Shown: one piece after another, positions 16,970 to 64,000 of the stretch | How positions within the stretch are numbered: the stretch's first letter is position 1 | Layout of the letters: each line of letters opens with the position of its first letter | Notes under the pieces: generated by a model | Seen by the model: the letters and a program-made list of their open reading frames with translations, nothing else | Database searches by the model: none | What the model was told of the DNA's origin: nothing | Program-made: the position numbers and the translations under genes | Source of the DNA: Octopus bimaculoides | Lineage: Eukaryota | NCBI RefSeq assembly: GCF_001194135.2 | Contig: NC_068985.1 | Span: 32,621,445 to 32,685,444, forward strand | DNA length: 64,000 nucleotides | Direction of reading: 5' to 3'

Positions 16970-17064
<95 letters not shown>

Positions 17065-17192: not shown

Positions 17193-17241
<49 letters not shown>

Positions 17242-29260: not shown

Positions 29261-29269
29261 GGGGGAGGG

Positions 29270-29880: not shown

Positions 29881-30539
29881 GACAACTCAACTTGACTCAA
29901 CACCAGGAAAAGTGATTAATAAATAATTTATTCATTTTATAACATTATCAGGTATTTATAAAAGACTAATTTAATACATGACATAAATTTTAAAATTCAA
30001 ATAAAAGTAATTGAGAAACTATACAGTTTTAATACAAGGCTAAAATTTAAATGAGAAATTTACTGAAAGTTGTATGCAATTCCCTTCAAATATTGTAGGA
30101 GATCATTCTGAAAAAGATGAAACAATATGCAGAATTCTATCATCTGCCTTCATATACTTCTTCAGTTTAGGGGGAAGGGGATGACCTCCAATCAGTTGCT
30201 CAAAAATTGCATCTCAGTTTCTTTGCACCTTATGTAGCCCATTTATGAATCTCCATATTGTGGGGTGCTCCATTCCCAGCTCTGTTTGGAGTCTTTTCTT
30301 TGCTGCTTCAGCATGGTTATTTGTCCAGTCTTCCCCGAGCAACATCCTCTTGTAAAAGATTAATCTTTTTATAAATTTCTGATAATATTTCGAATTTTAA
30401 AAGTTCTGCTTTTTTTTTTTTAATTCAAGCCATGTATTAATCTATAATCTTTTTATAAATTTCTGATAATGTTATAAAACAAATAAATTATTTATTAATC
30501 AATTTTCATGGTGTTGAGTTGTCCCAATTTGGGAATTTC

Positions 30540-38932: not shown

Positions 38933-39099
38933 GGCACAGGAGTGGCTGTGTGGTAAGTAGCTTGTTTCCCAACCACATGGTTCTGGGTTCAGTCCCACTG
39001 CGTGGCACCTTGGGCAAGTGTCTCCTACTACAGCCTCGAGCCGACCAAAGCCCTGTGAGTGGATTTGGAAGACGGAAACTGAAAGAAGCCTGTCATGTG

Positions 39100-40363: not shown

Positions 40364-40507
40364 TTAATATATATAATTCTGTGCAGTTGTTGACTTATCT
40401 AAAGAAACCATTACATCATCAACATTAGTTTGCAGTTTCTTATATTCATTAGCATTTGGCCGCCGACCACGTTTCTGGTTTCGCCCTTCTATGATGAACG
40501 CAATGAT
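40364..40507 (-). CDS. TGN38/TGOLN2-C5orf15 family protein, terminal exon (cytoplasmic tail); not in ORF track
   Basis: Acceptor ttatctttttctag|; hand translation IIAFIIEGRNQKRGRRPNANEYKKLQTNVDDVMVSLDKSTTAQNYIY*. Resembles recalled TGN46 [25 protein letters not shown] and C5orf15 EYHRLDQNVNEAM..DYIF tails. Confidence 0.88.
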   Translation of the reverse strand: MIAFIIEGRNQKRGRRPNANEYKKLQTNVDDVMVSLDKSTTAQNYIY

Positions 40508-42795: not shown

Positions 42796-43135
42796 TATAT
42801 ATGTATGTATTTGTCCCCCCACCATCACTTGACAACTGATGCTGGTGTGTTTACATCCCTGTAACTTATCAGTTCAGGCTTACAAAAAATAAGTCCTGGG
42901 GTTGATTTGTTTGACTAAAAGTGGTGCTCTAGCATGGCTGCAGTCAAATGACTGAAACAAGTAAAAGAATATGTGTGTGTGTGTACATACAATGAGCTTC
43001 CTCCAGTTTCCATCTACCAAATCCACTCACAAGGCTTCAGTTAGCTAGAGGCCATAGTAAAAGATACTTGTCCAAGACACCACACAGTAAGACTGAACAA
43101 GAAGTGATGTCTTTGTGAAGCAAACTTAAGCACAC
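42796..43135. mobile_element. SINE A 3' half (+) abutting a SINE A 5' half (-)
   Basis: ttgtccccccaccatcacttgacaac..aacaagtaaaagaa followed by aatgagcttcctccagtttccatctaccaaatccactcacaagg. Confidence 0.75.
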
Positions 43136-44423
43136 AGACTGGTAAACAACGCAGTCAAAAGTAAAAGTTGCAATGTACAGCCAAATGGGTATCAAATTAT
43201 GCATAACCTGTTTACTGGATAAGTGTATTAACCTTTTCATTATAAAAAATTATTTTTAAACTTTTTTTTACCAATTTGTTTCTTTACACATTTTGAAAAA
43301 AATTGTGAAAACAATTATTTTCACAGTTATATGTCCTGTTTTTTAATAACTTATTTAATCTTTTAGCATTTAGACTGGCCATATCTGATCCAAATATTCT
43401 ACTTGCTTTTATATATAAACTGGCCAGATCCTGCCTCTCATACTTACCATGCAATGTTATTGTAAAAAATAAATAATCACATCTTTAAAATTACAAAGTT
43501 ATGAGGCAATGCATCATTAATTCAAAACATTGTGGATAAATAAGTATTACATTTGACAGAATAATTCAAATACTAATGGGCTAAAGGAGATGGATAAAAG
43601 CTTCCCAATCAATAATGATGGCTGACTTCCACCTGTTTTACTTTTTGGAGGGGGCAGTGTTCTTTGCCTGTACAACTGCAGGTTGTGGGGGTGGGGAGGC
43701 ATTGAAGTTATGGTCTTTAATTGCATGAGGCATATGAAGTGAATTGTCTAGAAGGATGGTTTCGATAAATGGCTCAGCTGTCAGAAATGAAACAATTGCA
43801 GCCAAAAGATAGCTGAGCTTCAGCCAATTAGCTAACTCAAAAGGGCTGTAAAGTATGTTACATTAAGTAGGCAGTCTTCACTCAACGGATCTAATGGATG
43901 AAGAGACTATGATGATTGGTTAATGGTTAACTTCAGAGGTAAGGAACAGGTCAAGGATATAGACAGGAGTGGATACTAATGGGTCAGACAGTTGATGGTG
44001 GCAAAGGGTTTGCTCTCTGCACCAACAATACTGTTGTTTAGCCTTGACAGAACAGATCTATAATCAAAGGCATTTCAGCCATGATCATCACATCATTTCC
44101 TTAGGTATTACATATCTTTGACAACATTATCCAATGTGTTCACCTTTTTTTAAGAATGCAGGTTGTGATTTGAATGCTGTTCTTGCCTGTGGAAGGATTA
44201 CACAGAGACCCCTTTATTTGCTACAGGCTTTAGTGTGCAAGGATTGTGACAGCCAAGAGCTGTGTAGATTGAAGTCACCAAGAATGGTGGCAACAAAGAG
44301 AAGGAAACAACTGAACCACGGAATGTACTCAAAAAAAGATTAATATATCATCATTAAGTGGAAATGAATTTGCTTCCAGTTATTAATAAATTTATTCATA
44401 AGCAACAAAAATAAATGTTTTAC

Positions 44424-44557
44424 CTTTTGTTTGTTGTGGAAAACAATATATCCAGCAATACAAAGAACAATAGCTGTTAAGAAATAGCCCATGAAATGTG
44501 CAGATGAGGGTGCTTCATTGTAAGCTGTGCTCACTGGAGTTTTCTTTGGAACAGTAT
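44424..44557 (-). CDS. TGN38/TGOLN2-C5orf15 family protein, transmembrane exon (alternative in-frame acceptor at 44599)
   Basis: Acceptor ttcctattcag|, donor AAG|gtaaaa. DTVPKKTPVSTAYNEAPSSAHFMGYFLTAIVLCIAGYIVFHNKQK matches the family SSHF..TM..HNKRK signature. Phase 1 to 0 joins both neighbours in frame. Confidence 0.88.
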
Positions 44558-44959: not shown

Positions 44960-47900
44960 ATCATTATCCTCATTATCACCATCATTTAACATCTGTTTTC
45001 CATGCTGGTATGAGTTGGATGGTTTGACTGAAAACTGTTAAGCTGGGGAGCTGCACAAGGTTTCACTCTGATTTGGCATGGTTTCTACAGCTGAATGCCC
45101 TTCCTAATGTCAACCACTCCAAGAGTGTAGTGGGTGGTTTTTACATGGCACCTGCATGGGTGCCAGTAACAAAACACTGGCATCGGTCACGATTACAATC
45201 TCACTTGGCTTCACAGGTCTTCTCTAGTACGGTATATTACCAAAGTTCTTGTTCATTTGTCACTGCCTCTGCGAGGCCCAAAGTTCAAAGGGTGCTTTTT
45301 ATGCACCACCAGCAACAACTATGATTTCACTTGGCTTGATAGGTCTTCTCAAGCACAGCATATCACCCAACATTTGAAGGGTACTTTATACATGCCACTG
45401 GCATGAGTGCCAGTTACACAATGCTAGTATCAGCCATGACTGTGATGGGTCTTCTCAAGCACAGCATAACACCAAAGGTCTTGGTCACTTGTCATTGCCT
45501 CCATGAGGACCAACATTCAATGATCATGCTTCATCACTTCGTCCCATGTCTTCTTGGGGTCTATCTCTACCGCAGGATCCCTCCATCATTAGATATCAGT
45601 ACTTCTTCACACAGCTGTCCTCATCCATACGCATTACATGACCATACCAGTGCAGTCATGTCTCTTGCACATCACATCTGATGCCGCTTATGCGCAACTT
45701 TTCTCTCAGGATGCTTGCACTCTATTGTGCATGCACACTGATATTACACATCCAGCGAAGTATACTAGCTTCATTTCTTTCAAGCCTTCACATGTCCTTG
45801 GCTGTTACAGCCTGTGTTTCATTGCTGTGTAGCATGGCTGTTCACACATAAACATCATACAATCTGACTTTCATTCTGAGGGAGAGGCCCTTTTGTTACC
45901 AACAGAGGTAGGAGCTCTCTGAACTTTGCCTAGCCTATTCTTATTTTAGTAGCTACACTCTCAAAGCATCCACCTCTACTACTGACTTGGTCACCTAGGT
46001 AACAGAAGCTGTCAACTACTTCTAGTTTTCCCTGCTGGCATTTGATGGAGTCTATTTTCTGTACATTTTTGGTGTTTATTGTATTTGTGCATCTTCCACA
46101 CACAAAAGCTATTTTCTCTGTTAACAATCCTCTGATATTGATGCACTTTTTATGTGTCCGTATCTTACAGTAGACACATCTTATAGAATTACTACCTATG
46201 CCTACAAATAGAGCAGGGCCATCTGCCTGAAGGGATTTGCAATTTGTTTGCTCTCTTACTAACTAAGACTTTGGTATTTGCTAAATTAACTTTAAGGCCC
46301 TTTGATTCTAGACCTTGCTTCCATACCTGAAATTTCTTCTCTAGTCCTGGTAGTGATTCAGCTATAAGAACAAAGTCATCAGTATAGAGGAGCTCCCAGA
46401 GGCAGCCTGTCTTAATTCCTGTTATAACTGGAGAACTATGATGAACAAGACGGGGCTGAGGACTGATCCTTGGTGAACCCCTACTTGTACCCTGAATTCC
46501 TTGCTATACTTGTTGCTAACCTTCACCTTACTGACAGTGTCTCTGTCCATGGCTTGTACAGCTCTCACCAACCACTCATCTATTCCTAGCTTCCACATCG
46601 ACCACTAGATAAGGGAGTGGGGGACCCTGTCAAAGGCCTTCTCCATATTGACAAAAGACAGGTACAGGGGTTTATTTTTGGCTAGATATTTCTCCTGCAG
46701 CTGCCTAATCAGGAATATAGCTTCAGTTGTGCTCCTGCCTGGCACAAATCTAAACTGCACCTCATCTACACAAACTCTTTTTCTAATTAATTGAGCTATG
46801 GCCCTTTCTGTGACTTTCATCATCTGGTCCAGCAGTTTGATGCCTCTGTAATTATCCCTGTTTAAGGCATCACCTTTGCCTTTCTAGCAGTTGACTATGA
46901 TGCTGCTATACTAATCATCGCATATGACTACCTTGTGGACAACCTGATTAACTATATGAGCGACTAGGCCTACTCCACCAGAGATTTTAAGCATCTCATT
47001 AGAGATTCCTGATGGGCTAAGGACTTTCCTGGTCTTCATGTCCTTAATTGCTTTGTATAAGCACCTGTTGATTCAAATAGCTTGTCCCTCATTTGGGTCA
47101 ACATTTGGCAGACTCTCCTTCTCCCATTCATTCTCCATGTTTAGCAGCCTTTCATAATGGCATTTCCAAGCCTCTTTCTTTGCAGAATCATTAAATCAAG
47201 TGAAGTATCATCAATGTGGACACATTTCTCTCCTATGACATCACACTATCTGAAATGCTTCAAGTCTCTAGTCCTCACATTGCAGAACATAGGCAAACTT
47301 CTTTTCTTCTTCTTCCCTGGATAAATATACCGGTCTTCTAGCTTCCCTTCTGGTTATCTGATACAGTTCCCTGTTACTCCTCACACTTCTAGGCCTGTTT
47401 CTTTGCTCTAATGGCTTGTCTGTAGCATCGTTCTGCCACCACATCACCCTAGGTCTGAATGGAACTTTGCACCAGCTGCAGATTTGGTCTGTGGCACTCG
47501 GCAAGCTGTCCTGCAAGAATTCCCAGTTGTCCTCTATGCTACAAGTCTGTAGTTCCTCCTTTTTCTCATCAAATTTCTTGATTAGGGTGTCCCTAAATCT
47601 CTGACCATATAAAGGGTCCTTAAGCTTCCAAATCCTTCTTTTCCAGATTGGTCCGCTTCTTGGTATCCTTCCAGGCTGGGAGTCTAAAGTTACTAATGAC
47701 TAGTATATGCTGGTGGAGTACATTCTTCACCAGGTAAGGTCTTTGTATTTATGAGCAACCACATATCCCACTGTCAGGTGAGAATGTAATTGATCTGGCT
47801 AGAGTGGTCACCCAATTGGTAGGTTATCAGGTGACTGGTTGGCTTCCTGAAGCTGGTGTTGCTGATCAATAAGTTATTCACATCACAGAACTCCAGCAGC

Positions 47901-48800
47901 CTTGTCCCTTCTTTGTTTTAGGAACCAATTCTACAGCCCCCATGTACACTATGGAAGATACTGGGCTGCTGTCCAACAATGCGCATTGAAATCTCCAACC
48001 ATGAAGAAAGATGAGATCATTGTCGTTCATCTTTGAGGTAGCCTGCAGAAGAATATCATAAAAGCAGTCCTTTTGTTCATTTGGTAGACCTGCTTGCGGG
48101 GTATAGGCAGAGATAATTGTCACTGTATTATTCTTCAAAACTAGCCTGAGCTAGTATAACATACTCTGACTACTTCTATGACATTATCTTCCCATTTCTC
48201 TACAAGAAGTATGCCCACACCACCTACTCCAGCACTGTTACCTTTCCAGAAGATTTTATACTTGTATGTCATATCAGTGAGGAACCTGGCTGAAGCTCTC
48301 CTCCACCTTACCTCTTGAATGCAACACGCATCAACATGCCTCCTTTCAAGCGGCTCAACAATCACACCAGACTTACCTTTCAATATGCCTACATTTACAA
48401 TGCTAACTCTGAAAACTGGGAAAGGGGCGTGGGAGGGAACATGCGAAGAAGGTATTCAGTACTTGAAAAGAATGTTCCATTAAGCATTTGATAAGACATA
48501 TCACATCAGTTGTTCTTGTTTTAATCTACCATCATTCAATCATATTAAAATTACTGCTCCTATTGGGAGTGAGCATAATATAAGCATTGCAAATATCAGC
48601 ATTATTGCTGCTAACTTAAATGGGTCAACGTTTAAATTAAGTAGATAAACAGCTCTATGTTAATCCATTGTATGTAGAGAGAAAGGAGTAAGTGGTTTGT
48701 TAATTTACTAAGTAATGCATCTCCTTTTGGTGCATGCAGTAATGTGGATGAGATTGCTGGTGGTGCACAGATAAGTAAAACAGCCAGCTTCATTGCATAT
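44960..48800 (-). mobile_element. Near-full-length decayed RTE LINE (5' UTR, APE, RT with PHD-like insert, 3' UTR, CAT tail)
   Basis: Ordered fragments: VDACCIQEVRW, IISAYTPQAGL, VQFRFVPGRSTTEAIFLIRQLQEKY..EKAFDRVP, LEVVDSFCYLG, then (CAT)n terminus; ~3.8 kb. Confidence 0.9.
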
Positions 48801-50280
48801 AAGAGAGAGACTTGAAAGACTTGATCACCAGAGAAATCATGGCAAATATGAAAATACATGGATTATGAAACGGGGAGAGAATATTGTAAAAATTAAAGTA
48901 AGTGAGCATCAAGAATTACGAATTTTGAAAGTTGGTTTAAATCAGATTATGGCATGTTAGTATTATGAGTTAGATGAATGATGTGCAATTAAGATGAGAG
49001 AAATTTTCTTAGCTTAGCTGGACATTATGTGTGGAATGATAATAACAGCAGTAAATGAAAATAAATTGCATAGATAAATTATCATATAAGCAGGTTAAAC
49101 TTTCATTGTCCAACCAAGTTATCCAGACAGTAAATAGATTCAATGACTCACATGGGTTTTGCTGTTTACAACTATTTCCATGGGTTAAGGAATTTTAATT
49201 AGCGTAATTCTTGGCTCAATACCATGCTTTTGGTCTCAAATGTATTAATTTATAACTCTTTAATTCTCTTCCATGTAGAGAATCTCTGGAACAACTTTAG
49301 GATGTCATTGCAGGCAACTTGCAAAGAATGTGTATGAACTCTTATAAATGTACCAATTTTCAGTTCAATTTTCCCACAAAAATGCATAAGTATGCATTTA
49401 TATACATTGCTTGTATAGTTTTTAATCCATTCTTCTACACCCAATCTTCTCATAGTCCACCAGAGCAGTTTAATGCCTTCTCAAAGATATCAAGGACTTA
49501 ATATGAATTTAGCTATTTGCAATGATGTTTTACATACAGTTGGCAAGGAATAAAATGAAAAGTCTATTATACCATGGTATAATACTCGTATAAAACAAAC
49601 TGCATTTCACTGTACAAAACCTAAGATGGAATCATGTCCCAAACAGGCTCTATTATCTGTAGCACATGAACTAGCAACTTGAGATTGCTACAGATACCAA
49701 ATAGTAGACCACTCCCCTTTTCCTTTAAAAGTTTACAAAGTAGATCAAAGTGTAATTAATGGGAGTTTTTCCTTCAGAAATATGTATAGTGAGTTGGTTA
49801 GTAAAGGGAGCAGTAGTTCATCATCTCAACAACTATGGTAGAAGGAACAATAAATTACTTTATACACATGATAGAGAGTCCTCTGTGATGTTCAGCAAAG
49901 GACTTAGTAATGTTGAGCAACAAGAGATGTTATATTAAACAACTCCAATATGGATTCCCCTTGTCAATAACAATCAATATTCAGGTTTCATTTTTTGTGA
50001 AAGCTTGAGGATGAAATTTTTTTCATTATATAGCATGAAAAGTTCCCATTTCTTTGTTACAATACCATAGATTTGACTCATATCTTAGTTTCAAGTATTT
50101 CATGTTGTTTCTCTTCTGCCACATTTTGCAGGGTTTCTTTCACTTTGCAGCTTTTTCCTTTATTGTAAAAACACCAGATTTCCTTGTCTCAACAAGTTTG
50201 TTTTAGCCTAAACAAAACTATTTGACAAGCATACAGCATTGTGGTCAACATATATTTCCAAAGCCTCAGAATCTTGAAAA

Positions 50281-53312: not shown

Positions 53313-55850
53313 CAGGCTGTATTTGGTTACCAATAGAAATTTTGGCTTTCTGTTGTGAATCTTTTGAAGGTGAAATATTTGCCCTTGTATCAGAGGTTTT
53401 TGATGCATCAATACCTGCTTCCTGTCCATTATTAGGTGAATTTTGAAAACCAGGAGATTGAATATCAGCGTTAGTTCCTTCAGCATGGCCTTTTTTAGAA
53501 CTAACTGGGTTTTGAAAATCAGATGGATTCCTAGAATTAGCAGAGATACCTCCAGCATTAGAGGGCTTTACAGAACCACCAGATGGTGTCTCAGAATTAA
53601 GTCCAATTCTAGGATTAGATAGGTTTTGAGAATCAGATGATAACATTTCAGAATTAGGTCTACTTCCAGTATTAAGTGGGGTTTGAGAACCAGGAGATTG
53701 GATACCAGTCTTAGCTCCTTCAACAGGGGCGTTTCCACGATTAAGTGGGTTTTGAAAATCAGATGGATTCTTAGAATTGAGTTTATCTCCAGTGCCTTTT
53801 CTAGAACTAACTGGGTTTTGTAAATCAGATGGATTCCTAGAATTAGCAGAGATATCTCCAGTATTAGCAGAGATACTCTTAGAAGTTGCTCCACTTCCAG
53901 CATTAGATGAGTTTATAGAACCACCAGATAGTGTCTTAGAATTAAGTCCAATTCTAGGATTAGATAGGTTTTGAGAACCAGATGATAACATTTCAGGATT
54001 AGGTCTACTTCCAGTATTAAGTGGGGTTTGAGAACCAGGAGATTGGATACCAGTCTTAGCTCCTTCAACAGGGGTGTTTCCACGATTAAGTGGGTTTTGA
54101 AAATCAGATGGATTCTTAGANNNNNNNNNNCCAGTGCCTTTTCTAGAACTAACTGGGCTTTGTAAATCAGATGGATTCCTAGAATTAGCAGGGATATCTC
54201 CAGTATTAGCAGAGATACTCTTAGAAGTTGCTCCACTTCCAGTATTAGAAGAGTTTAGAGAACCACCAGATGGTGTCTCAGAATTAAGTCCATTTCTAGC
54301 ATTAGATGGGTTTTGAGAACCAGATGATAACATTTCAGGATTAGGTCTACTTCCAGTATTAAGTGGGGTTTGAGAACCAGAAGATTGGTTACCAGTCTTA
54401 GCTCCTTCAACAGGGGTGTTTCCACGATTAAGTGAGTTTTGAAAATCAGATGGATTCTTAGAATTGAGTTTATCTCCAGTATTAGCAGAGATACTCTTAG
54501 AAGTTGCTCCACTTCCAGTATTAGATNNNNNNNNNNNNNNNNNNNNNNNNNNNNNNNNNNNNNNNNNNNNNNNNNNNNNNNNNNNNNNNNNNNNNNNNNN
54601 NNNNNNNNNNNNNNNNNNNNNNNNNNNNNNNNNNNNNNNNNNNNNNNNNNNNNNNNNNNNNNNNNNNNNNNNNNNNNNNNNNNNNNNNNNNNNNNNNNNN
54701 NNNNNNNNNNNNNNNNNNNNNNNNNNNNNNNNNNNNNNNNNNNNNNNNNNNNNNNNNNNNNNNNNNNNNNNNNNNNNNNNNNNNNNNNNNNNNNNNNNNN
54801 NNNNNNNNNNNNNNNNNNNNNNNNNNNNNNNNNNNNNNNNNNNNNNNNNNNNNNNNNNNNNNNNNNNNNNNNNNNNNNNNNNNNNNNNNNNNNNNNNNNN
54901 NNNNNNNNNNNNNNNNNNNNNNNNNNNNNNNNNNNNNNNNNNNNNNNNNNNNNNNNNNNNNNNNNNNNNNNNNNNNNNNNNNNNNNNNNNNNNNNNNNNN
55001 NNNNNNNNNNNNNNNNNNNNNNNNNNNNNNNNNNNNNNNNNNNNNNNNNNNNNNNNNNNNNNNNNNNNNNNNNNNNNNNNNNNNNNNNNNNNNNNNNNNN
55101 NNNNNNNNNNNNNNNNNNNNNNNNNNNNNNNNNNNNNNNNNNNNNNNNNNNNNNNNNNNNNNNNNNNNNNNNNNNNNNNNNNNNNNNNNNNNNNNNNNNN
55201 NNNNNNNNNNNNNNNNNNNNNNNNNNNNNNNNNNNNNNNNNNNNNNNNNNNNNNNNNNNNNNNNNNNNNNNNNNNNNNNNNNNNNNNNNNNNNNNNNNNN
55301 NNNNNNNNNNNNNNNNNNNNNNNNNNNNNNNNNNNNNNNNNNNNNNNNNNNNNNNNNNNNNNNNNNNNNNNNNNNNNNNNNNNNNNNNNNNNNNNNNNNN
55401 NNNNNNNNNNNNNNNNNNNNNNNNNNNNNNNNNNNNNNNNNNNNNNNNNNNNNNNNNNNNNNNNNNNNNNNNNNNNNNNNNNNNNNNNNNNAGGAGATTG
55501 GTTACTAGTCTTAGCTCCTTCAACAGGGGCGTTTCCACGATTAAGTAAGTTTTGAAAATCAGATGGATTCTTAGAATTGAGTTTATCTCCAGTATTAGCA
55601 GAGATACTCTTAGAAGTTGCTCCACTTCCAGTATTAGATGAGTTTATAGAACCACCAGATAGTGTCTCAGAATTATGTCCATTTCTAGGATTAGATGGAT
55701 TTTGAGAATCAGATGATAGAATTACAGGATTAGGTCCACTTCCAGTACTGACTATACCTGGAATTTTAACTACACCTCTACCAGAGAACATAAAACTGGA
55801 TCCAATAGTATTGTTATTAGATGCTTCAACTCCGAGATGTTTACCTGTAA
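53313..55850 (-). CDS. Large lumenal-domain exon of the TGN38/TGOLN2-like protein, built of 92/115-aa Ser/Asn/Gly/Pro-rich tandem repeats
   Basis: Acceptor ttttctttttcag|55850 (alternative at 55844), donor CCTG|gtaaat. No stop in the sequenced parts of this frame on either side of the gaps; phase 1 to 1 matches the TM exon. Repeat period 345 nt (gataccagtc at 53701 and 54046). Confidence 0.78.
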
Positions 55851-55964
55851 CTGAAAAAGAAAACAAATATTAGTCATAAATGTACATAATTATAATTTTT
55901 GATATATAACAAAATTAGGTGAATAATATATATACAATTTCAAATACATGAATGTGTATTATGG

Positions 55965-57688
55965 TATTTCAGTGTGCTTTAGGAATACTTGGTGAGGTCC
56001 ATCTCTTCTGCAAGAGTTCAGTCCCTCAATAAGTTTAGCCTGCCAGAAGAAACAGTTGCCAGAGTGTGGCTGAAAATGATATCGGAGACAAAAGTGAAAG
56101 TCAAGAGAGAACCATTGTACTTGTCCATCCCTAAGGATGGCAACCAAGGTATTCTATCAACTTGAACAAAACAGACCTGGAGGCATATGACTTGGATAGT
56201 GGGATGATTCAGGATGAGAGAAACCAATGATTGTGGACTGCTACTCCTAAAATTTGCTAGCACTCACAAGCTGACCATAGCCAACACACTGTTCCCAAAC
56301 AAGACGCCTGTCAAAATAACATGGCATGCACCCAACACAGGACACACAACCAAATTAATTTAATCCTCATATCTCAAAAGTTCAAGGCTAGGACAAAGAT
56401 TTTCCTTGATGCAGATGTTAACAGTGATCATGATTTGGTTCTGATGACAATGAGACTCAAACTGAAAAGATCCATAAGAAAAGAGTAACACATTAAGTTT
56501 GACATAGACAAACTGAAAGATCCCAGGGTTGTACTGGTGTTTAAGGTGAAAGTGGGTGGCAGGTTTGCTGCCCTTAACATTCTAAAAGATAACAAATTCC
56601 CTGACTGACCACATTGGGGAAGTATTTCAGGAAATGTCTCTAGAAGTGCTAAGGAGAAGTAGAAGAAAGAAGAAATTATGGGACACTGATGATAACTTGG
56701 ACTTATGTGACTTAAGGCAGGACCTGAAGAAGACCAAGCTAACAGGTCAGGAGACATGTCAGAAATACAATGCTGCAAATAAAAAGGTTAAGAAGAAAAT
56801 GAGGGAAAAATGGATAGCAGACCAGTGCAAAATCATCAAAGTTGAGATAAAGACAGACAAAAGCAAGGTTGCTTTTGAAACCCTCAAAATCCTACCAGAA
56901 ACAAAGATACACACCACCACTCCGATTCTCTAGGAGGAAATCAAAGAGGTAGTGTGCATACTCAAAAATGGAAAATCCCCAGGAATGGATAATATCCCGT
57001 TAGAATTCCTGAAACAAGAAGGACCAAAGCTTATCAAGGCACTAACAACCTATTAGAAGATATGAGAGAAGAAGCAGTGACCAATCACTGATGATATCCA
57101 TGCCCAAGAAAGTTAACTTGAGACTCTGCCTGAATTAAAGAACAACCAGCAACAACAAAGTATTGCTAAAATTCCTGCTAAACAGATTCAAGAAGCATGC
57201 AGGAGAACAGGTAGGACTTAGGCCCCAAAGGTGTACTGTGGGGTAAATATTTAACATTAGACTGTTCACTGAGAAACATCTGCAATGCCAGTCTGACCTC
57301 TGTCATAACTTCATCAACTTTGAAAAGGCCTTTGGCTGCTTGGCACAATGGGTTATGGCAAGTGATGGAGAATTACAACTTCAACACCCTCATCAAAGTA
57401 ATCCAAGAACTGTATATAAACTCAAATAGTGTAGTTCTTTCTCATGAACAACAACATTGAAGAATTATTCAGGACAACAGTAGATGTTTGACAAGGATGT
57501 CAACTTTCTCCAGTGCTTTTCAGCATCTTCCTGGAGAGCAACATACAGGAGACATGCCAAGATTTCCACCCCTCTGCTTCCAATGGAAGACAGCCCATTT
57601 CCAGCGTGCCCTTTGCTAATAATACTGACCTGTTAGGAAGCAATGAAGAACTACAAAAGCTCATCATCAGGCTGGAAAAAGTATCAAG
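55965..57688 (+). mobile_element. Decayed LINE (RTE-like, second family): APE end and RT, interrupted at 57689
   Basis: THKLTIANTLF, ADVNSDHDLV, KSPGMDNIP, FINFEKAF, QGCQLSPVLFSIFLE, PFANNTDLL..LIIRLEKVS. Confidence 0.85.
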
Positions 57689-57879
57689 TGTGGTGCTATC
57701 TCCTTTTCATTAGTCACCTACCATAACACGAAGTCTCTAATTTAAAAAGAACACATTTGGGTCCCTAATAGTGGGAGGCCATTACTATGTATGCTTTGCT
57801 AATAAACGGACATAGCTTATCTCACGCTGAATTGTCTTTCTATTTATTAACCAATATTGTCAAGCTTCATTATACTACA
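57689..57879 (+). mobile_element. Putative 5' LTR (191 bp)
   Basis: Begins TGTGGTG, ends TACTACA, contains AATAAA at 57801, and directly precedes the PBS. Confidence 0.7.
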
Positions 57880-57897
57880 TGGTGTCAGAAATGGGAT
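57880..57897 (+). promoter_or_regulatory. Primer-binding site complementary to the tRNA-Leu 3' end
   Basis: TGGTGTCAGAAATGGGAT, one mismatch to TGGTGTCAGAAGTGGGAT. Confidence 0.8.
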
Positions 57898-57985
57898 CCC
57901 AAAGGATTTGAAGTATCTCAAAAAAAAAAAAAAAAAATGAGAATTCTTCACAGAATTGTAAGTTTATTTTTTCATTTGATTTGGA

Positions 57986-59427
57986 GAATGTCTGCAAGGC
58001 CTTTTTCTGCAAGTTTCCCATCTCCAGAGCGAATGTCTTTATCAGGAAATGTGGCTAGCAAGTGGAGAAGATTTAAACAAAACTTTTTGAATTATTCAAT
58101 TGCCAGTCGACTCTCAAATGAATTTGATACTGGATATCAAACTTCTGTATTTCTGGCGACTATTAGAGAAGAATGTTTTGATATAAATGAAGAACTACAA
58201 TTTGACGATGAAGAACAGAAAAATGATCTATCTGAAGTGATTAACAAATTCAAGGAATTTTTCATTGGTGAGACACACGAAGCTTATGAGTCTTATCAAT
58301 TCCACCTTTGTAAACAAGAGAATTTCGAGAACATAGAAATCTACATAGCTGTCTTGCACCAACTTGCAAAAAACTGAAACTTTGAAGAATTAAAGGACAA
58401 ACTTATTAGGAGTCAAGTTGTTGTTGGTGTTAAAGACAATCTTTTGAAAGAAAAACTTTTAGCAGACAAAAAGCTAACCCTTGACAAATACCTACAGATA
58501 GAGCACATGAGACATCAAAATAACAAACAAAAGCTACTTCCTCAACTGTCAATGCAGCAGATCCACAATTAAACCATGTCACAGGACCAAATAATAAAAA
58601 AGGGTATCAACATATAAAAAGAAGATGCCTGAGAGAAAGTGCATGTGGTGTGGAATGTTCACATTTCACAATAGAAATGACTGCCCTGCCTCAGCAACAA
58701 GATGCAGACGGTGTTCAAAAATAGGACACTACGCAACTGTTTTCAAGAATTTTTCAATGGTTAGGAGAATTGAAGAGGAAGAACATCATTTCTTAGGTTA
58801 TGTTTCTTCGGAAAATATAAATGCAGTTTGTGAAGACAATAAAATAGAATGGCAAGCAAAAATAGAAGTCACCACCAAAGTCTGCAGCACAATTGTCGAA
58901 TTTAGATTGGATACTGGTGAAGATGTGATAGTAGTACCTAACTGGTTCTTCAGGAAGAATTCTCCAATAATAAAACCTACAAACAAAAGGTTATATGGAC
59001 TAGGTCAACACAAAATAAAAGTACTTGGACGTGTAGATGCCACATTGAGTTATGGGAAAGCAATGTTGCAACAGGAACTGTATGTTGTGCAAGACTTAGC
59101 TGAACCATTATTGGGTGGACCAGCAATCAAAGGTCTCAATCTATTAAGTAAAATCAATGCGATAAAAAGTGAAGCTGTCCAATATAAAAAAGACTTCTCC
59201 AGTGTGTTTACAGGCCTATGGAAATTGAGGCATGTATACAAAATTCACTTGGATGAAACAGCTCAACCTTTCTCAATCGCCGTCCCCAGACAACTACCAC
59301 TTTCTATGAAGAAGAAAGTCCAGCAAGAATTAAAGTGATTGGAAAAAGAGAAAATTATCCATCCAGTGAAGTCCCCAACAGACTGGTGTGCTCCCATTGT
59401 AGTGGTCCTGAAAAACGATGAAAAAGT
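57986..59427 (+). mobile_element. Ty3/Gypsy (Mag-like) gag-protease-RT N-terminus, decayed and truncated
   Basis: GNVASKWRRFKQNF gag start; tandem knuckles CMWCG..H..C and CRRCSKIGHY; protease RLDTG; RT start PRQLPL..SPTDWCAPIVVV. Confidence 0.88.
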
Positions 59428-59970
59428 CTCTGCTGCCATGATGAAGCTGAACATCATATAGAAAACTCCATTAGTTTCCCAAGACTCAAAGTGTGTAAGT
59501 CCCTGGTGACTTTGGTCCTTCTGTATGGGTCTGAGAGCTGGACTCTAACAGTTAACATGGAACAAAGAATCCAGACATTTGAGCACAAGTACTTCAGAGG
59601 CTGCTACACATCCCAAACACAGAGCACAAAATGAACAGCTTTGTAAGGCAGTGAGTCAACAAATACAATAGTAGACAGGAACCACTCTTTGTGCAGATAA
59701 GAAGGTGAAAGCTTGCGTGGTATGGTCATGTATCCAGCCACAACTCCCTGTCCAAAACCATCCTTTAGGGCACAGTTGGGTAAGGGAGAAAGAGAGGCAG
59801 AGAAAATCCTAGTCTGACAACATTAAGGAATGGTCAAGTCACAAACCATGACCCTGCTATGCATGACAGAGAACAAAGACCAGTGGTGACGGCCGACTGC
59901 AAAAGTGTCTAGAGTGACACACCAATGACTGCATCAGTTAAGGGAAATTGATGATAATGAAATAATATGA
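59428..59970 (+). mobile_element. Resumption of the interrupted LINE (RT C-terminus and 3' end)
   Basis: AMMKLNII..KSLVTLVLLYGSESWTLT..LAWYGHV..SKTIL.GTVG..SDNIKEW. Confidence 0.8.
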
Positions 59971-60857
59971 AAATTTAAATGACTGCTAAAATTCATTTTT
60001 AATATGAGTTAAAAAAAAAATTCTTCATTCAGAGATCATCTGTATAGAAACAAAGGGTTATTTTACTTTTAAAATGGATTGCAAAACATTCCCAAAACAT
60101 TTAAACCAATTTGTTATTGGTGATTCTAGATTCACACAATTTCTTCCTTAATAAGACTAACTTTTGAGAATTTTTGACAAAACACATTTGTTTTTATTAA
60201 GAGGAACAACATGATGTTAACATAGATCATACACTATTAACCCATATGGAAAAATCTAACCATCACCTGTCAAATCTAACAAAGCAAATAATAAACATGT
60301 TCAAGGTTAGCTAGTGCTGCAGTTACTATTTGATCTTGATAATGATAAAGACTGCCAGTCTTGTTTTGCCAACATTCTGTTCACTAGCTGTAATATAATG
60401 CTGTCTGGTCATTTAACATGCTTTCCCCCACCCCCCTTTTTAAACTTAATTGGCAACTATAAAAGGTAGATTGGTGAATTCTCATGTTTTTAATGTCAGA
60501 AATAATAACAGTTAGGTTAAATGCAATGATTAAGAAAGAATATTAGGATTATCATTATTCTTGCTGAAGCAAGAGAGAAAACTTTGAGTTATATTTCATC
60601 AGCAGAAGCATTTCGCTTGCTTGTACTGTAACAACTGACTTGCTTTTTAAAATGTTCATATAAGAAAAATAAAATCAAGAGGCATATAAACTGTTACAAA
60701 AGGTTTGCCTCCATGGCATGGCCAGTTTAATCAAGAAAGTATTAGATAGTTGAAAAGAACCGATAGCATGGTACCATAGGCTACAGGCAGCAATCCTGCT
60801 AAATATGCAGGACTCCAGGAGTTACAACAAAACTTGAGATAAAAAAAATAATAATAA

Positions 60858-61013
60858 TCCTTACTGTTATAGGCACAAGGCCTGAAATTTTGGGTGAGAG
60901 GTACCATCAATTACATCAACCCCAGTGCTTAACTGGTACTTATTTTACTGAACCCAAAAGGATAAAAGGCAAAGTTAACCTCAGCGGAATTACTACTGCT
61001 GCTGCTGCTACTG

Positions 61014-61052
<39 letters not shown>

Positions 61053-61460
61053 ATAATAATAATAATAATAATAATAATAGCAATAATAATTTCAAATTTT
61101 GGGAGATGGCCAGCAATTTTGGAAGAGTGGATAAGTCAATTCAACTGGTACTTATTTTATCAACCCTGAAAGGATGAAAGCAAAGTCAACTTTGGCAGAA
61201 TCTGAACTCAGAACATAAAGACAGGCGAAATGGTGCTAAGCATTTTGCCCGATGTGCTAATGATTCTATCAGCTCACGGCCTTCATGATAATTCTTTCTA
61301 CTGTAGGCACAAGAACTAAAATTTTGGGGGAGGGGGCACTTAATTTATCAACTCCATAAGAATGAAAGGCAAAACTGACTTTGATGGAATTTGAACTCAG
61401 AATGTAAAAATGCTGTTAAACATTTTGCCTAGTGTACTAATGATTCTGCCAGCTCACAGC
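60858..61460 (-). mobile_element. Three tandem SINE B copies with an (ACT)n(AAT)n tract
   Basis: Repeated ataggcacaagg..aaattttggg..aaaggcaaagt..gaactcagaa; trinucleotide runs at 60990-61090. Confidence 0.8.
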
Positions 61461-61659
61461 ATTAATAATAATACTAAAGTTCAAAGATGGACTTGGAGAT
61501 TGAAAATCAACAGGATGTGGAAAATGAAGGAGAGAAAGTTCACCAACCATATCCCAAATAACATCAATATCTATATAGTTCAGATGTCCAACTGGGAACA
61601 GCCCACAAACTTGGCAGTTAATATCTTGCCTTTAATGCCTTAGACTAACAGTTTGGATC

Positions 61660-61948
61660 TGGACTTAAGGATACAAAACAGGAAATACAGATAGGAACAA
61701 TGGCACATAAAATACACCATTTTGAGCGTGGCCGTTGCCAGTACCGCCTGACTGGCCTTCGTGCGGGTGACACGTAAAAGCACCCACTACACTCTCAGAG
61801 TGGTTGGCGTTAGGAAGGGCATCCAGTTGTAGAAACTCTACCAAATCAGATTGGAGCCTGGTGTTGCCATCCGGTTTCACCAGTCCTCAGTCAAATCGTC
61901 CAACCCATACTAGCACAGAAAGCGGACGTTAAACGATGATGATGATGT
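61660..61948 (+). mobile_element. RTE LINE 3' terminus, young copy
   Basis: Closely matches 13635-13875; ends ttaaacgatgatgatgatg. Confidence 0.85.
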
Positions 61949-62461
61949 CTCTAACATGAATAATCTAGCCTTTTATATATCACACCTAGAAAAACAAGTA
62001 ACAGCCATGACTAAAATGTCTTCAATTGTTGGTAAGAGTAGACATGAGGTTCAATAAAAATAAGCAGAGTTAAGGCAACTAATGAATCCTATAAAAAGTT
62101 GAGAAGCTATTGACAGTTACAAAAACCTGCATTATATATACTGTAGTGCAATATGATAGATAGATAGATAGATGCATGCATACATACATACATACCTACG
62201 TACATAGTATGCACAAGTTCAGGTTCATACCTGTAATTATTGGGTCACTGAGATATGTAATACACTGCCTAAATACCAATCTTAAAAAATTAGGCTTCTC
62301 AAAACGAGAAAGGTGATTCAAAGACTACAGATCCAATCCATTACTGGAACTAAAAATCTGTAAAACTTTCCAGGAGTTTATCATTTAAGTATATATGAGC
62401 ATGTCTAGATATGCAAGTATATACATGGGAATACATACATAAAACAAAACATACAAATCTG

Positions 62462-62527
<66 letters not shown>

Positions 62528-62639
62528 AATAAAAATACCCCACTGATGTTGAAATTCCAGTGAAGGAGTCTTGGATCTAGGTTAGAAACTAACTCTTTCT
62601 CTATTCACAAGAAATCTTGAAATAAAACAAAATAGCAAT

Positions 62640-62948
62640 ATACATACATACATATATCTGATGTACTCTCCCATGTAAGACAACATATAAGTGTCCAGCT
62701 TCTGCTGAATGACCTACAGATATGATTTGTTTCTAGTGATCAAATGTATGTGCCACATATTAGTTCACTGCCTCGATCAAATTGATGATGCCTGAACAGG
62801 TACAGTGTACCACGTGTCAGCTGTTGAAGTGATTGCAGAGAAATGTGAGATGAAGTGTTTTGCTCAAGAACAAAACGCACCACTCTGTCTAGGAATTGAA
62901 ACCACGCGATCATGAGTCCAACACCTTAACCACTAGGCCATGCACCTT
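62640..62948 (-). mobile_element. SINE family C (tRNA-like head)
   Basis: Reverse complement: gcatggcctagtggttaaggtgttggactcatgatcgcgtggtttcaattcc (A and B boxes), then ttcttgagcaaaacacttcatctc. Confidence 0.7.
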
Positions 62949-63180
62949 CTTCATGGCTATATATATATATAGTTGTCAAAAAATACAGAGTAGAGAAAAA
63001 CTGAAAACGCAAATTGCAGGCAGTCAAACAGATTCCCGAATGCATAAATGAAAACATTCGAAGTAGTTGAATCATGTATATTTATAACATCAACATAAAT
63101 CATGCATATAGTTGTCTAAGAATCCATGTCAGAAGAAAAGAGGTGCATGTGTATGATTATCAGTATTATAGATCCCTCAC

Positions 63181-63354
63181 CAATCAGTTTCACACTAGGT
63201 ACTAAAACTGGATGTTATAAAACAGCACAGTTAAGTAATACTGTGAAAGACCACCATATTTGTTTTTCCATACCTGCTATCTCTGAAGAGCACATGGTAT
63301 TACTTAACTGTGTTACCTAACATCCAGTTTTAGTACCTAGTGCAAAACCTATTG
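63181..63354. repeat. Long hairpin / MITE-like inverted repeat
   Basis: Perfect 25-bp (63193-63217 / 63318-63342) and 16-bp (63226-63241 / 63297-63312) pairings; ~45-nt spacer. Confidence 0.85.
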
Positions 63355-63786
63355 ATAAGGTATGCTGAAATGGCTCCATCACCACTCAGTGTCATTTTCC
63401 ACACTATCCCTTAAAGTAGCAAACATTCCCTAGCTACACACAAGAGAGAAAACGTGTTAAAAAGATAGGTCGGTTCCTCTCCAATTTTTTTGTAAATTCT
63501 TAAATGTATCTCCTTCTGTGTATATATATATATATCTACCAAACAAAGACGATTTTTTATTGAACTCCTAATACCTATTGTTGAATATTCTCCTTTAAAC
63601 TGTTTTTAACATTTCCTTCTTCTTATCAAAGAATGTATATAAGTATTTTAATACCTTTGTGACAACCCGTACTTAACACAACAAAGCTTATAAAAAGCTT
63701 TACATTTTACTTTTGACAATCTTTTCCTAAAAAAGTGAAACCGGTCAAGTGAATAAACATCTTTAAAATTGCATTTTCAAACCTTC

Positions 63787-63830
<44 letters not shown>

Positions 63831-63944
63831 ACTTGGGGATGGTCATATTGCCAGTTTAGCCAATAAAAACACACGCACTGTATATTTGGTGTTAATTTGC
63901 TTCAGCTTTATATTACATTACATTACATTACATTACATTAATCC

Positions 63945-64000
63945 CATTTTGGCCAGAGTTCTTTCGTCACACTTCTGTGACCTCATCAGTAGTCCTTTGC
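63945..64000 (-). ncRNA. Minimal hammerhead ribozyme-like motif with intact core
   Basis: Minus strand: ggacta CUGAUGA g gucac-agaagu-gugac GAAA g-aa-cu C uggcc. Stem I is weak and the window edge truncates the context. Confidence 0.5.

What the first reader, a model, noticed from the sequence alone, without database searches (positions are those of the whole stretch)
53313..55850. Giant tandem-repeat exon: ~850-aa mucin-like lumenal domain on a TGN38-type protein
Seen: a 92-aa unit (TGDKLNSKNPSDFQN..SKSISAN, 276 nt) and a 115-aa variant adding TGDISANSRNPSDLQNPVSSRKG (345 nt). Units are near-identical at DNA level, and a ~960-N gap has room for about three more. Known: human TGN46 has short lumenal repeats. 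Inference: an independent, much larger and recent coding-VNTR expansion that could lengthen a glycosylated stalk and vary between individuals. This is the strongest novelty candidate in the window.
Basis: partly seen in the sequence, partly recalled or inferred. Interest (0 to 1): 0.75.

Follow-up and report, generated by a model that had tools for sequence, protein, structure and literature searches.

The report
Octopus TGN38-like gene: repeat stalk exon
This is the large, repeat-built exon for the probably sugar-coated stalk of the octopus version of the Golgi-recycling membrane protein TGN38/TGN46; the gene is already annotated and such repeats are usual in the family, though the stalk changes unusually fast between two octopus species.

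Summary
Window 53313-55850 (minus strand) is one exon. It is open in a single frame in all three sequenced pieces and is built of 92-aa (276-nt) units, 94-96% identical, some followed by a 23-aa insert. Both N gaps keep the frame as written. Repeat register needs 13 nt at the 10-N gap and 128 nt plus whole units at the 965-N gap (965 = 128 + 3x276 + 9). The exon therefore has 568 codons at minimum and 846 as scaffolded. It splices in phase to a transmembrane exon (44424-44557) and a tail exon (40364-40507). Together these are 48% identical to rat TGN38 and pass Pfam PF17818. The window is Octopus bimaculoides, and the gene is already annotated as XP_014783128.1, "TGOLN2-like". That model skips 159 sequenced residues and lacks the true tail. 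The O. sinensis orthologue has the same four-exon structure and its own 42/85-aa repeat array. About a fifth of the family proteins I fetched carry lineage-specific lumenal repeats, so the architecture is ordinary. One result is less ordinary: between the two octopuses the repeat exon diverges four to five times faster than the introns, mostly at non-synonymous sites (pN/pS about 2.2), while the tail exon is 141/141 nt identical.

The parts
53313..55850 (-). Exon 2 of the TGOLN2-like gene: the lumenal repeat exon. Intron phase is 1 at both ends. It is 2538 nt as scaffolded, of which 1563 nt are sequenced.
   Evidence: A single open frame runs through all sequenced pieces. The acceptor ttttcag|TT and donor CCTG|gtaaat are identical to those of the O. 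sinensis orthologue. The exon is contained in the annotated protein P0016.
55747..55850 (-). Non-repeated 5' part of the exon (L)TGKHLGVEASNNNTIGSSFMFSGRGVVKIPGIVS
   Evidence: It differs strongly from O. sinensis, which has about 40 extra residues here.
55594..55746 (-). First, partial unit copy (U0). It covers unit codons 42-92.
   Evidence: 92.8% nt identity to units b and c.
55492..55593 (-). Unit a, codons 1-34, cut off by the 965-N gap.
   Evidence: 96.1% nt identity to unit b.
54527..55491 (.). Assembly gap of 965 N. Repeat register requires 128 nt plus whole units.
   Evidence: Arithmetic on the unit register: 965 = 128 + 3x276 + 9. The frame is kept as written.
54481..54526 (-). Last 15 codons of a unit, lying just downstream of the gap in gene orientation.
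   Evidence: 45/45 nt identical to the end of unit b.
54205..54480 (-). Unit b. This is the only complete 92-codon unit read without interruption.
54136..54204 (-). 23-codon insert b (TGDIPANSRNPSDLQSPVSSRKG). It is a duplicated, diverged copy of the head of the unit.
54121..54130 (.). Assembly gap of 10 N. Repeat register requires 13 nt, or 13 nt plus whole units.
   Evidence: The flanks read, compared with the intact copy at 53793-53776. Both lengths give the same frame.
53863..54120 (-). Unit c, codons 7-92.
   Evidence: 95.7% nt identity to unit b.
53794..53862 (-). 23-codon insert c (TGDISANSRNPSDLQNPVSSRKG).
53551..53793 (-). Unit d, 81 codons. Its 3' end is truncated.
   Evidence: 94.2% nt identity to unit b.
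53488..53550 (-). Degenerate insert d (GISANSRNPSDFQNPVSSKKG).
53313..53487 (-). Degenerate half-unit plus the unique 3' part of the exon (HAEGTNADIQSP...GIDASKTSDTRANIS...ISIGNQIQP).
   Evidence: The last 32 alignable codons (GIDASKTSDT...ISIGNQIQP) are 91.7% nt identical to O. sinensis, with pN/pS 0.92.
44424..44557 (-). Exon 3: the juxtamembrane segment and the transmembrane helix (D)TVPKKTPVSTAYNEAPSSAHFMGYFLTAIVLCIAGYIVFHNKQK.
   Evidence: Acceptor and donor were read. The exon is 98% aa identical to O. sinensis. It is conserved in L001, L002 and L004 at 76-83% aa.
40364..40507 (-). Exon 4: the cytosolic tail IIAFIIEGRNQKRGRRPNANEYKKLQTNVDDVMVSLDKSTTAQNYIY plus the stop codon. It carries a Y-x-x-hydrophobic motif, YKKL.
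   Evidence: Acceptor ctag|ATC. It is 141/141 nt identical to O. sinensis. With exon 3 it is 48% identical to rat TGN38 residues 304-357. It matches PF17818 at 31.2 bits against a gathering cut-off of 26.2.

Best explanation
The region is exon 2 of the Octopus bimaculoides orthologue of TGN38/TGN46 (TGOLN2).

Protein architecture. This is a type I membrane protein. Exon 1 lies outside the window, roughly 25 kb upstream by analogy with O. sinensis. It supplies a signal peptide and a small cysteine-rich domain. Exon 2, the finding, supplies a long, low-complexity, Ser/Asn/Gly/Pro/Thr-rich lumenal stalk. The stalk is built from at least five, and as scaffolded about eight, tandem 92-aa units. Each unit has two N-glycosylation sequons, and some units carry a 23-aa insert that is a duplicated unit head. 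Exons 3 and 4 supply the membrane anchor and a 52-residue cytosolic tail. The tail has the family's HNKxKIIAFxxEGR box and a YKKL sorting signal.

Inferred from TGN38/TGN46 biology, not shown here. The tail tyrosine motif drives AP-2-dependent endocytosis and return to the trans-Golgi network. The disordered, glycosylated stalk does the lumenal work, such as cargo sorting or self-association.

Shown here: how the array evolves. Units are gained, lost and homogenised within each species, so the copies are near-identical within a species. On top of this, amino-acid substitution runs faster than the neutral intron rate. The anchor and tail are almost frozen.
For: Coding status and gene model:
- The frame is open across unique and repeated parts, and the splice phases match.
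- Third codon positions are 85% A/T, against 58% and 41% at positions 1 and 2.
- The annotated proteins P0016 (O. bimaculoides XP_014783128.1, 'TGOLN2-like') and P0004 (O. sinensis XP_029636731.1) contain this exon and the same exon 2-exon 3 junction.
- The O. sinensis locus L005 has four exons with identical splice sites and is colinear with the window through its introns.

Family membership:
- The spliced C-terminus matches PF17818 at 31.2 bits, above the 26.2 cut-off.
- Rat TGN38 residues 304-357 (sequence taken from PMC10359807) hit the same profile region at 34 bits and are 48% identical over 54 aa without gaps, E = 3e-19.
- phmmer with the 92-aa C-terminus finds 695 proteins. They include mollusc, nemertean, annelid, hemichordate and mammalian proteins, many of them named TGOLN2.
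- 140 of 141 tails carry Y-x-x-hydrophobic at the same place.

Repeats are typical of the family: 36 of 157 fetched proteins have lumenal tandem repeats.

Evolutionary pattern:
- Intron substitution divergence is 6.2% over 19,427 sites.
- Unit against unit between species gives pS 0.13, pN 0.28-0.30 and pN/pS 2.1-2.3. Fisher p = 0.019, or 0.0004 when the three alignable blocks are pooled.
- Neutral simulations never reach the observed pN at one or two times the intron rate. At four to five times that rate they reach the observed ratio in only about 0.5% of runs.
- BLASTN alignments made without any protein guidance show differences by codon position of 17/25/11, 13/20/7 and similar.
- The TM exon is 98% aa identical and the tail exon 141/141 nt identical, p = 1e-4 under neutrality.

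Function of the stalk in TGN46: it is heavily glycosylated, disordered, poorly conserved, and necessary and sufficient for cargo sorting into CARTS carriers (PMC10928510).
Against: - No transcript of O. bimaculoides was available. Inclusion of the exon rests on two automated gene models and on conservation.
- Exon 1 and its signal peptide are not in the window.
- The number of units is unknown because of the gaps.
- Short-read assembly of units that are about 95% identical can create chimeric copies, so the differences within the array may be partly artefact.
- The excess of non-synonymous change rests on small synonymous counts (7 of 53 sites), on low-complexity alignments, and on a choice of which units to compare.
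- Synonymous divergence (0.13) is itself about twice the intron rate, so the units compared may not be strict orthologues.
- Localisation, glycosylation and recycling are all inferred by homology.
Confidence: 0.85

Rival explanations
1. The 'giant' size is a scaffolding artefact. The real exon has about 568 codons, with five units, much like the 576 codons in O. sinensis. The 965-N gap over-estimates the missing sequence.
For: Only 1563 nt are sequenced. Repeat register allows closure with 128 nt and 13 nt, giving 1704 nt or 568 codons. The gap-free O. sinensis exon has 576 full codons. Gap sizes in short-read scaffolds across repeats are unreliable.
Against: 965 N is a specific estimate rather than a placeholder. 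It matches 128 + 3x276 to within 9 nt and is in frame. The two flanks of the gap differ from each other and from units b to d, as expected for separate copies.
Confidence: 0.35
2. The stalk is simply an unconstrained spacer. The apparent excess of amino-acid change comes from three sources: comparing non-orthologous units of an old array, composition-dependent mutation, and alignment or assembly noise. It does not come from positive selection.
For: Synonymous divergence between the compared units (0.13) is twice the intron rate, which hints at paralogy. G and C sites mutate faster (7-9%) than A and T sites (5%), and codon positions 1 and 2 are richer in G+C. The unique 3' part of the exon gives pN/pS 0.92, which is neutral-like. 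Disordered regions generally evolve fast.
Against: Neutral simulations that use the intron-derived, base-specific substitution matrix give a median pN/pS of 0.83-0.88 at every rate tried. They reach 2.25 in about 0.5% of runs at four to five times the intron rate. Second codon positions differ at about 30%, third positions at 11-17%, in alignments made on DNA alone. The same direction is seen within the array (variable columns 10/6/2). The non-repeated exon 1 domain also fits: 57% aa identity against 87% expected neutrally.
Confidence: 0.4
3. The repeat is a non-coding minisatellite in an intron that happens to be open in one frame, or it is an exon of some other gene.
For: A 276-nt repeat only has to be open once for the whole array to look open. 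No transcript was examined here.
Against: - The unique flanks of about 35 and 58 codons are open in the same frame.
- Splice sites with matching phase bound the exon, and they are identical in O. sinensis.
- All length differences between copies are multiples of 3.
- Base composition shows strong codon periodicity.
- Two independent gene models include it.
- The homologous O. sinensis array uses the same frame even though its DNA is about 25% different.
- No ORF longer than 72 aa lies on the other strand.
Confidence: 0.03

Closest known systems
TGN38 / TGN46 (TGOLN2), the vertebrate trans-Golgi network integral membrane protein
   Same: Type I layout. The TM helix and tail are 48% identical to rat TGN38 residues 304-357. 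They share the HNK(R/Q)KIIAFxxEG(K/R) box, the RRP motif and the tyrosine signal (SDYQRL versus NEYKKL) at the same spacing. The Pfam hit is the same. The lumenal domain is low-complexity, rich in sequons, poorly conserved and made of tandem repeats. For example, peccary TGOLN2 (P0142) has a 28-aa period in 6 copies.
   Different: The unit is 92/115 aa, against 14 aa (28-aa dimers) in the mammalian example seen here. The stalk has no sequence similarity to the vertebrate one. The octopus proteins have an N-terminal cysteine-rich domain encoded by a separate exon. The tail continues about 24 residues beyond the tyrosine motif to a conserved ...NYIY end that rat TGN38 lacks. Localisation and recycling have not been tested in any cephalopod.
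Octopus sinensis XP_029636731.1 (labelled 'dentin sialophosphoprotein'), the orthologue at the syntenic locus L005
   Same: Four exons with the same splice sites. Introns are colinear, with 6.2% substitution divergence. The TM exon is 98% aa identical and the tail is identical. Exon 2 is also one repeat exon. Its 85-aa long unit is homologous to the 92-aa unit here.
   Different: The array has a different organisation: two 85-aa units and six 42-aa sub-units. Units are only 48-55% aa identical to those here. The 5' part of exon 2 carries about 40 extra residues. The public name is misleading and reflects composition only.
KCT2 (keratinocyte-associated transmembrane protein 2), namesake of Pfam PF17818
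   Same: The only Pfam model that matches is named after it. The match covers profile positions 117-180, which are the TM helix and tail.
   Different: Profile positions 1-116 (the KCT2 lumenal part) are not matched. Rat TGN38 hits the same C-terminal positions equally well. Public names of the nearest relatives are TGOLN1/2-like, not KCT2.
Mucin-type coding VNTRs (for example the MUC1 tandem-repeat exon)
   Same: A single large exon made of near-identical tandem units encodes an extracellular or lumenal, probably glycosylated, disordered stalk. Copies are homogenised within a species.
   Different: The composition is Ser/Asn/Gly-rich (T 7%, P 8%, S+T+P 35%) rather than Pro/Thr/Ser-rich. The unit is long (92 aa) and copies are few (5-8). 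Length polymorphism and O-glycosylation are untested.

Membership tests
TGN38/TGOLN2 family | A curated family model is matched above its gathering threshold. | tested here: met
   The spliced exons 3 and 4 score 31.2 bits against PF17818, above the 26.2 cut-off. Rat TGN38 residues 304-357 score 34 bits on the same profile positions.
TGN38/TGOLN2 family | A single C-terminal TM helix is followed by the juxtamembrane box HNK(R/Q)KIIAFxxEG(K/R). | tested here: met
   The sequence reads HFMGYFLTAIVLCIAGYIVF-HNKQKIIAFIIEGR. The alignment to rat TGN38 is gap-free at 48% identity, E = 3e-19. 141 of 157 fetched relatives have the box.
TGN38/TGOLN2 family | A cytosolic tyrosine sorting signal Y-x-x-hydrophobic (SDYQRL in TGN38) lies at the conserved distance from the membrane. 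| tested here: met
   NEYKKL aligns with SDYQRL. 140 of 141 family tails have Y-x-x-[LIVMF] there, and YKKL occurs in 17 of them. The function of the motif is taken from PMC2156176.
TGN38/TGOLN2 family | Type I topology with an N-terminal signal peptide. | tested here: inconclusive
   Exon 1 is not in the window. The annotated model P0016 starts MASFGQTVAGFLLFCLCCFYQPCLS, which looks like a signal peptide and is conserved in O. sinensis. No signal-peptide predictor was run.
TGN38/TGOLN2 family | A poorly conserved, low-complexity, sequon-rich lumenal domain, often made of tandem repeats. | tested here: met
   S+N+G+P+T+Q make up 65% of the domain. There are 9 sequons in the 519 sequenced residues. 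Repeats are present. 36 of 157 relatives also have repeats.
TGN38/TGOLN2 family | Steady-state localisation at the trans-Golgi network, with cycling through the plasma membrane. | not testable with these tools
   This needs imaging of a tagged or antibody-labelled protein in cephalopod or heterologous cells.
KCT2 proper | The KCT2 lumenal region (PF17818 profile positions 1-116) is matched. | tested here: not met
   Matches in the window protein, P0004, P0005 and P0006 all start at profile position 112-117.
Mucin-type domain | Pro/Thr/Ser-dominated composition (typically above 40%) with dense O-glycosylation. | tested here: not met
   S+T+P is 34.9%, with T 6.7% and P 8.3%. Asn (13.7%) and Gly (11.9%) are as prominent. 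Glycosylation itself cannot be tested here.
Coding VNTR (array length polymorphic between individuals) | Copy number differs between individuals. | not testable with these tools
   Only one assembly of the species was available. The repeat found no match in the large protein collection.

The most novel reading that the evidence does not exclude
The whole lumenal part of the octopus TGN38-like protein, meaning the cysteine-rich head and the repeat stalk, may be under diversifying selection, with repeat turnover as a second source of variation. That would point to an arms-race type of interaction at a protein that visits the cell surface, for example with a pathogen or toxin that exploits the recycling route, or with a fast-changing secreted cargo. 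The sorting tail stays frozen even at synonymous sites.
Probability: 0.3. Interest if true: 0.5.

Novelty: new member of a known kind. Interest (0 to 1): 0.3.

Why it matters
For the genome scan this closes the finding. It is a real exon of an already annotated, correctly named gene, and its repeat architecture is normal for the family.

Two practical points follow:
- The public O. bimaculoides model XP_014783128.1 is wrong at both ends of this region. It skips 159 sequenced residues and everything in the gaps. It reads into an intron instead of using the conserved tail exon, so it lacks the very motif that defines the family.
- The O. sinensis orthologue carries a misleading name.

Biologically, the lumenal domain of TGN46 has recently been shown to be the part that sorts secretory cargo (PMC10928510). 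A pair of closely related species in which that domain differs by about half its residues and in repeat layout, while the anchor and tail are identical, is a natural swap experiment for asking what the stalk sequence is for.

Tried and rejected
- Word-indexed protein search with the 270-aa repeat piece: 340 candidates, none significant. The same tool with the C-terminus found only three genomic ORF fragments. That index evidently lacks the annotated cephalopod proteins. The exhaustive representative search was what worked.
- Search for a signal-peptide exon on the minus strand at 55851-64000: nothing convincing. tblastn with P0016 confirmed that residues 1-114 are not in the window.
- Related genomic loci L001, L002/L003 and L004 are probably more distant cephalopods, with the TM exon 76-83% aa identical. 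They hold the TM and tail exons, but no repeat exon lies in the 0.5-4.4 kb available upstream. They could not be used to compare the repeat.
- Look-up of the contig encoding P0016, to obtain O. bimaculoides exon 1: not on record.
- Pfam scan of the repeat piece and of the cysteine-rich N-terminal domain: no family.
- Literature searches for KCT2/TGOLN2/PF17818 and for TGOLN2 with positive selection returned nothing specific. Two old JCB papers are indexed with the TGN38 tail sequence, but it is not in their held text.
- Reading the array as a transposon or satellite was rejected. The unit occurs only in this exon, both in the window and in L005.
- Structure prediction was not run. A single-sequence model of a low-complexity stalk would not discriminate between the explanations.
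Full report
**1. The observation**

The coding strand is the minus strand. Reading 55850 down to 53313, one frame has no stop in any of the three sequenced pieces: 119, 131 and 269 residues. The other frames and the plus strand are broken at least once per unit; the longest plus-strand ORF is 72 aa.

- a 92-residue unit, TGDKLNSKNPSDFQN...SKSISAN (276 nt);
- a 23-residue insert, TGDISANSRNPSDLQNPVSSRKG, that follows two of the copies. It is a diverged duplicate of the head of the unit.

TRF reports a period of 342 with 91% matches, and a 57-nt sub-period inside the unit. The unit is thus itself built from older modules of about 19 residues. The main units (a-d) are 94.0-96.1% identical in DNA; the first partial copy is 87.5-92.8% identical to them. 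The unit occurs nowhere else in the window.

**2. The gaps**

In all three pieces the first base of every codon has a coordinate divisible by three, so both N runs preserve the frame as written. That could be chance, about 1 in 9. Repeat register gives a stronger test.

- At the 10-N gap the flanks are ...GGC ACT GG and TCT AAG AAT.... The intact copy at 53793 shows that exactly 13 nt (A GAT AAA CTC AAT) belong between them. 13 and 10 leave the same frame.
- At the 965-N gap the upstream flank ends after unit codon 34 and the downstream flank starts at the third base of codon 76. So 128 nt plus whole units are missing, and 965 - 128 = 837 = 3 x 276 + 9.

The scaffold is therefore consistent with three more 92-residue units. 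Only 1563 nt are actually read. The exon is 1704 nt (568 codons) at minimum and 2538 nt (846 codons) as scaffolded.

**3. Gene model**

- The exon begins at an acceptor ttttcag|TT (55850) and ends CCT G|gtaaat (53313). Both flanking introns are phase 1.
- The next exon begins ...ttcag|AT ACT GTT at 44557, so G+AT gives Asp and the frame continues into DTVPKKTPVSTAYNEAPSSAHFMGYFLTAIVLCIAGYIVFHNKQK|gtaaaa (44424).
- A fourth exon begins ctag|ATC ATT GCG at 40507. It encodes IIAFIIEGRNQKRGRRPNANEYKKLQTNVDDVMVSLDKSTTAQNYIY and a stop codon.
- No signal-peptide exon lies in the 8 kb of window upstream of the repeat exon.

**4. Identity**

The spliced C-terminus passes Pfam PF17818 at 31.2 bits, above the cut-off of 26.2. 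That model is named KCT2. The rat TGN38 targeting segment, residues 304-357 as printed in PMC10359807, hits the same profile positions at 34 bits. It aligns to the octopus sequence without gaps at 48% identity, E = 3e-19, and NEYKKL lies opposite SDYQRL.

An exhaustive phmmer search with the 92 residues found 695 proteins.
- One is P0016, which is XP_014783128.1, [quoted passage not shown]. It is the existing gene model of this very locus.
- The top hit, P0004, is XP_029636731.1 from O. sinensis.
- Further hits include proteins named TGOLN1/2 or TGOLN2-like from Lottia, Pinctada, Potamilus, Mercenaria, Haliotis, a nemertean and mammals, plus unnamed annelid and hemichordate proteins.
- 141 of the 157 fetched proteins have the HNKxKIIA box, and 140 of those have a Y-x-x-hydrophobic motif at the conserved place.

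So the window is O. bimaculoides, the gene is a TGN38/TGOLN2 family member, and it is already annotated.

**5. Errors in the public model**

P0016 consists of exon 1 (114 residues, not in the window), then residues 1-100 of the first sequenced piece, then residues 10-269 of the third piece. It thereby jumps over both gaps, the whole 131-residue middle piece and 28 further residues. It then runs through the donor of the TM exon into the intron (...HNKQKVKHLFLLLMNKF...). It therefore lacks the tail and does not hit Pfam.

The tail exon proposed here is supported by three lines of evidence:
- its identity with O. sinensis;
- its conservation in three other cephalopod-like genomic contigs, L001, L002 and L004;
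- a spliced 1260-nt transcript contig, L006/P0005.

**6. The orthologous locus**

L005 (O. sinensis, gap-free) has four exons: 3001-3358, 28801-30531, 38938-39071 and 42801-42941. The acceptor and donor of exon 2 are the same as here. Intron 1 is about 25 kb, which explains why exon 1 is outside this window.

The introns are colinear with the window at 84-93% BLAST identity. Counting substitutions only, they differ at 6.2% of 19,427 sites.

Exon 2 of O. sinensis is also one repeat exon (TRF period 126), but it is organised differently: two 85-residue units and six 42-residue sub-units. The 85-residue unit is homologous to the 92-residue unit here, at 48-55% amino-acid identity. Within a species, units are 89-96% identical in protein. 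The unit therefore predates the split of the two species, and each lineage has since amplified and homogenised its own version. It does not support the idea that the repeat is unique to one species.

**7. How ordinary is it?**

A simple periodicity scan of the 157 fetched family proteins found clear lumenal tandem repeats in 36. Periods run from 7 to 118 residues and copy numbers reach 26. Examples:
- Mercenaria: 14 aa x 26
- Lottia: 62 aa x 3.3
- Haliotis: 17 aa x 11
- peccary TGOLN2: 28 aa x 6

The sequences of these repeats are unrelated between lineages. A squid-like transcript, P0005, gave no tandem-repeat signal in the same scan. Lineage-specific repeat stalks are thus a family habit. 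The octopus unit is at the long end of the range.

The composition is S 19.8%, N 13.7%, G 11.9%, P 8.3% and T 6.7%, with two N-X-S/T sequons per unit. "Mucin-like" holds only in a loose sense.

**8. A less ordinary result**

The repeat exon is far more diverged between the two octopuses than the introns around it. It is 74-77% identical in DNA, against about 94% for the introns.
- In a 73-codon unit-to-unit alignment, pS is 0.13, pN is 0.28-0.30 and pN/pS is 2.1-2.3. Fisher p = 0.019, or 0.0004 when pooled with the two unique blocks.
- BLASTN alignments made without protein guidance show the same thing. Differences at codon positions 1/2/3 are 17/25/11, 13/20/7 and so on.
- I ran simulations with the intron-derived, base-specific substitution matrix. 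At the intron rate they give 87% amino-acid identity and pN 0.057. They never reach pN 0.29 at one or two times that rate. At four to five times that rate the median pN/pS is 0.86, and only about 0.5% of runs reach 2.25.
- Within the O. bimaculoides array the variable columns fall 10/6/2 by codon position, and pN/pS is 2.7-4.3. The counts are small (p = 0.07).
- The non-repeated exon 1 domain is only 57% identical in protein between the two species, with the cysteines and the signal peptide conserved.
- By contrast the TM exon is 98% identical in protein, and the tail exon is 141/141 nt identical (p = 1e-4 under the intron rate).

Caveats:
- Synonymous counts are small.
- The sequence is low-complexity.
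- The compared units may be paralogous, since pS is twice the intron rate.
- The short-read assembly may be noisy.

I read this as suggestive of positive selection on the lumenal part, not as proof.

**9. Mechanism**

Shown here: the exon structure, the family membership, the repeat anatomy and the evolutionary pattern.

Inferred from work on TGN38/TGN46:
- The tail tyrosine motif mediates endocytosis and return to the trans-Golgi network (PMC2156176).
- The disordered, glycosylated lumenal domain carries the sorting function. It tolerates, or even favours, rapid sequence change (PMC10928510).
- Array change by unequal exchange or slippage between 276-nt units is the standard explanation for within-species homogeneity. 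I did not test it directly.

**10. Verdict**

This is a real feature, correctly located and largely correctly interpreted. It is neither a new kind of thing nor an unannotated gene. Its value lies in the annotation corrections and in the contrast between a fast-evolving stalk and a frozen tail in two closely related octopuses.

Noticed in passing
window 40364-40507 and 44343-44423 (minus strand): The public model XP_014783128.1 (P0016) reads through the donor of the TM exon into the intron (...HNKQKVKHLFLLLMNKF...). It misses the conserved tail exon with the YKKL signal. It also skips the sequenced piece 54131-54525 entirely.
   Followed up: yes
window 40367-40507 versus L005 42801-42941: The tail exon is 141/141 nt identical between O. 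bimaculoides and O. sinensis, although the introns differ at 6.2% of sites. This suggests constraint on synonymous sites as well, perhaps from RNA structure, editing or regulatory elements.
   Followed up: partly
tails of P0004-P0053 (family members) and window 40367-40440: Many non-mammalian family members extend the tail beyond the tyrosine motif. The extension is conserved, ...NV(E/D)EV(M/L)PSL(E/D)KS...(N/K)(Y/F)(I/V)(Y/F), and ends the protein. Rat TGN38 stops shortly after YQRL. This looks like a second conserved C-terminal motif, and I do not know its function.
   Followed up: no
L005 (O. sinensis CM016863.1:41746975-41792918): The orthologue XP_029636731.1 is publicly named 'dentin sialophosphoprotein'. 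The name comes from its Ser/Asp/Asn-rich repeats. By its C-terminus (25.4 bits on PF17818, just under the 26.2 cut-off) and its synteny it is the TGOLN2-like gene.
   Followed up: yes
P0016 residues 1-114 and P0004 residues 1-119 (exon 1, outside the window): The octopus proteins carry an N-terminal cysteine-rich domain with no Pfam match. Its cysteines are conserved, but the rest is only about half identical between two species whose introns differ by 6%.
   Followed up: partly
window 1468-15100 (plus strand): Exons of a ZSWIM8-like gene lie here. The ORF at 10493-10867 hits Pfam ZSWIM4-8_C at 33 bits. Other long open stretches at 1468-1872, 7786-8271 and 8817-9494 look like further exons.
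   Followed up: partly
window 45336-49549 (minus strand): A LINE-like element with reverse-transcriptase ORFs (RVT_1 at 46608-46883) sits in the intron between the repeat exon and the TM exon. The region aligns colinearly with O. sinensis at 90%, so the insertion predates the split of the two species. More diverged copies lie at about 51.2-52.1 kb, 27.5-31 kb and 6.5-7.4 kb.
   Followed up: partly
window 41661-42640 (minus strand): Broken open reading frames here resemble a mariner/Tc1-type transposase. The fragment I scanned against Pfam gave no hit at E <= 0.001.
   Followed up: no
window 16135-17480: A long, degenerate, TA-rich microsatellite tract (translating as YIYIYI...) is interrupted by four assembly gaps.
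   Followed up: no
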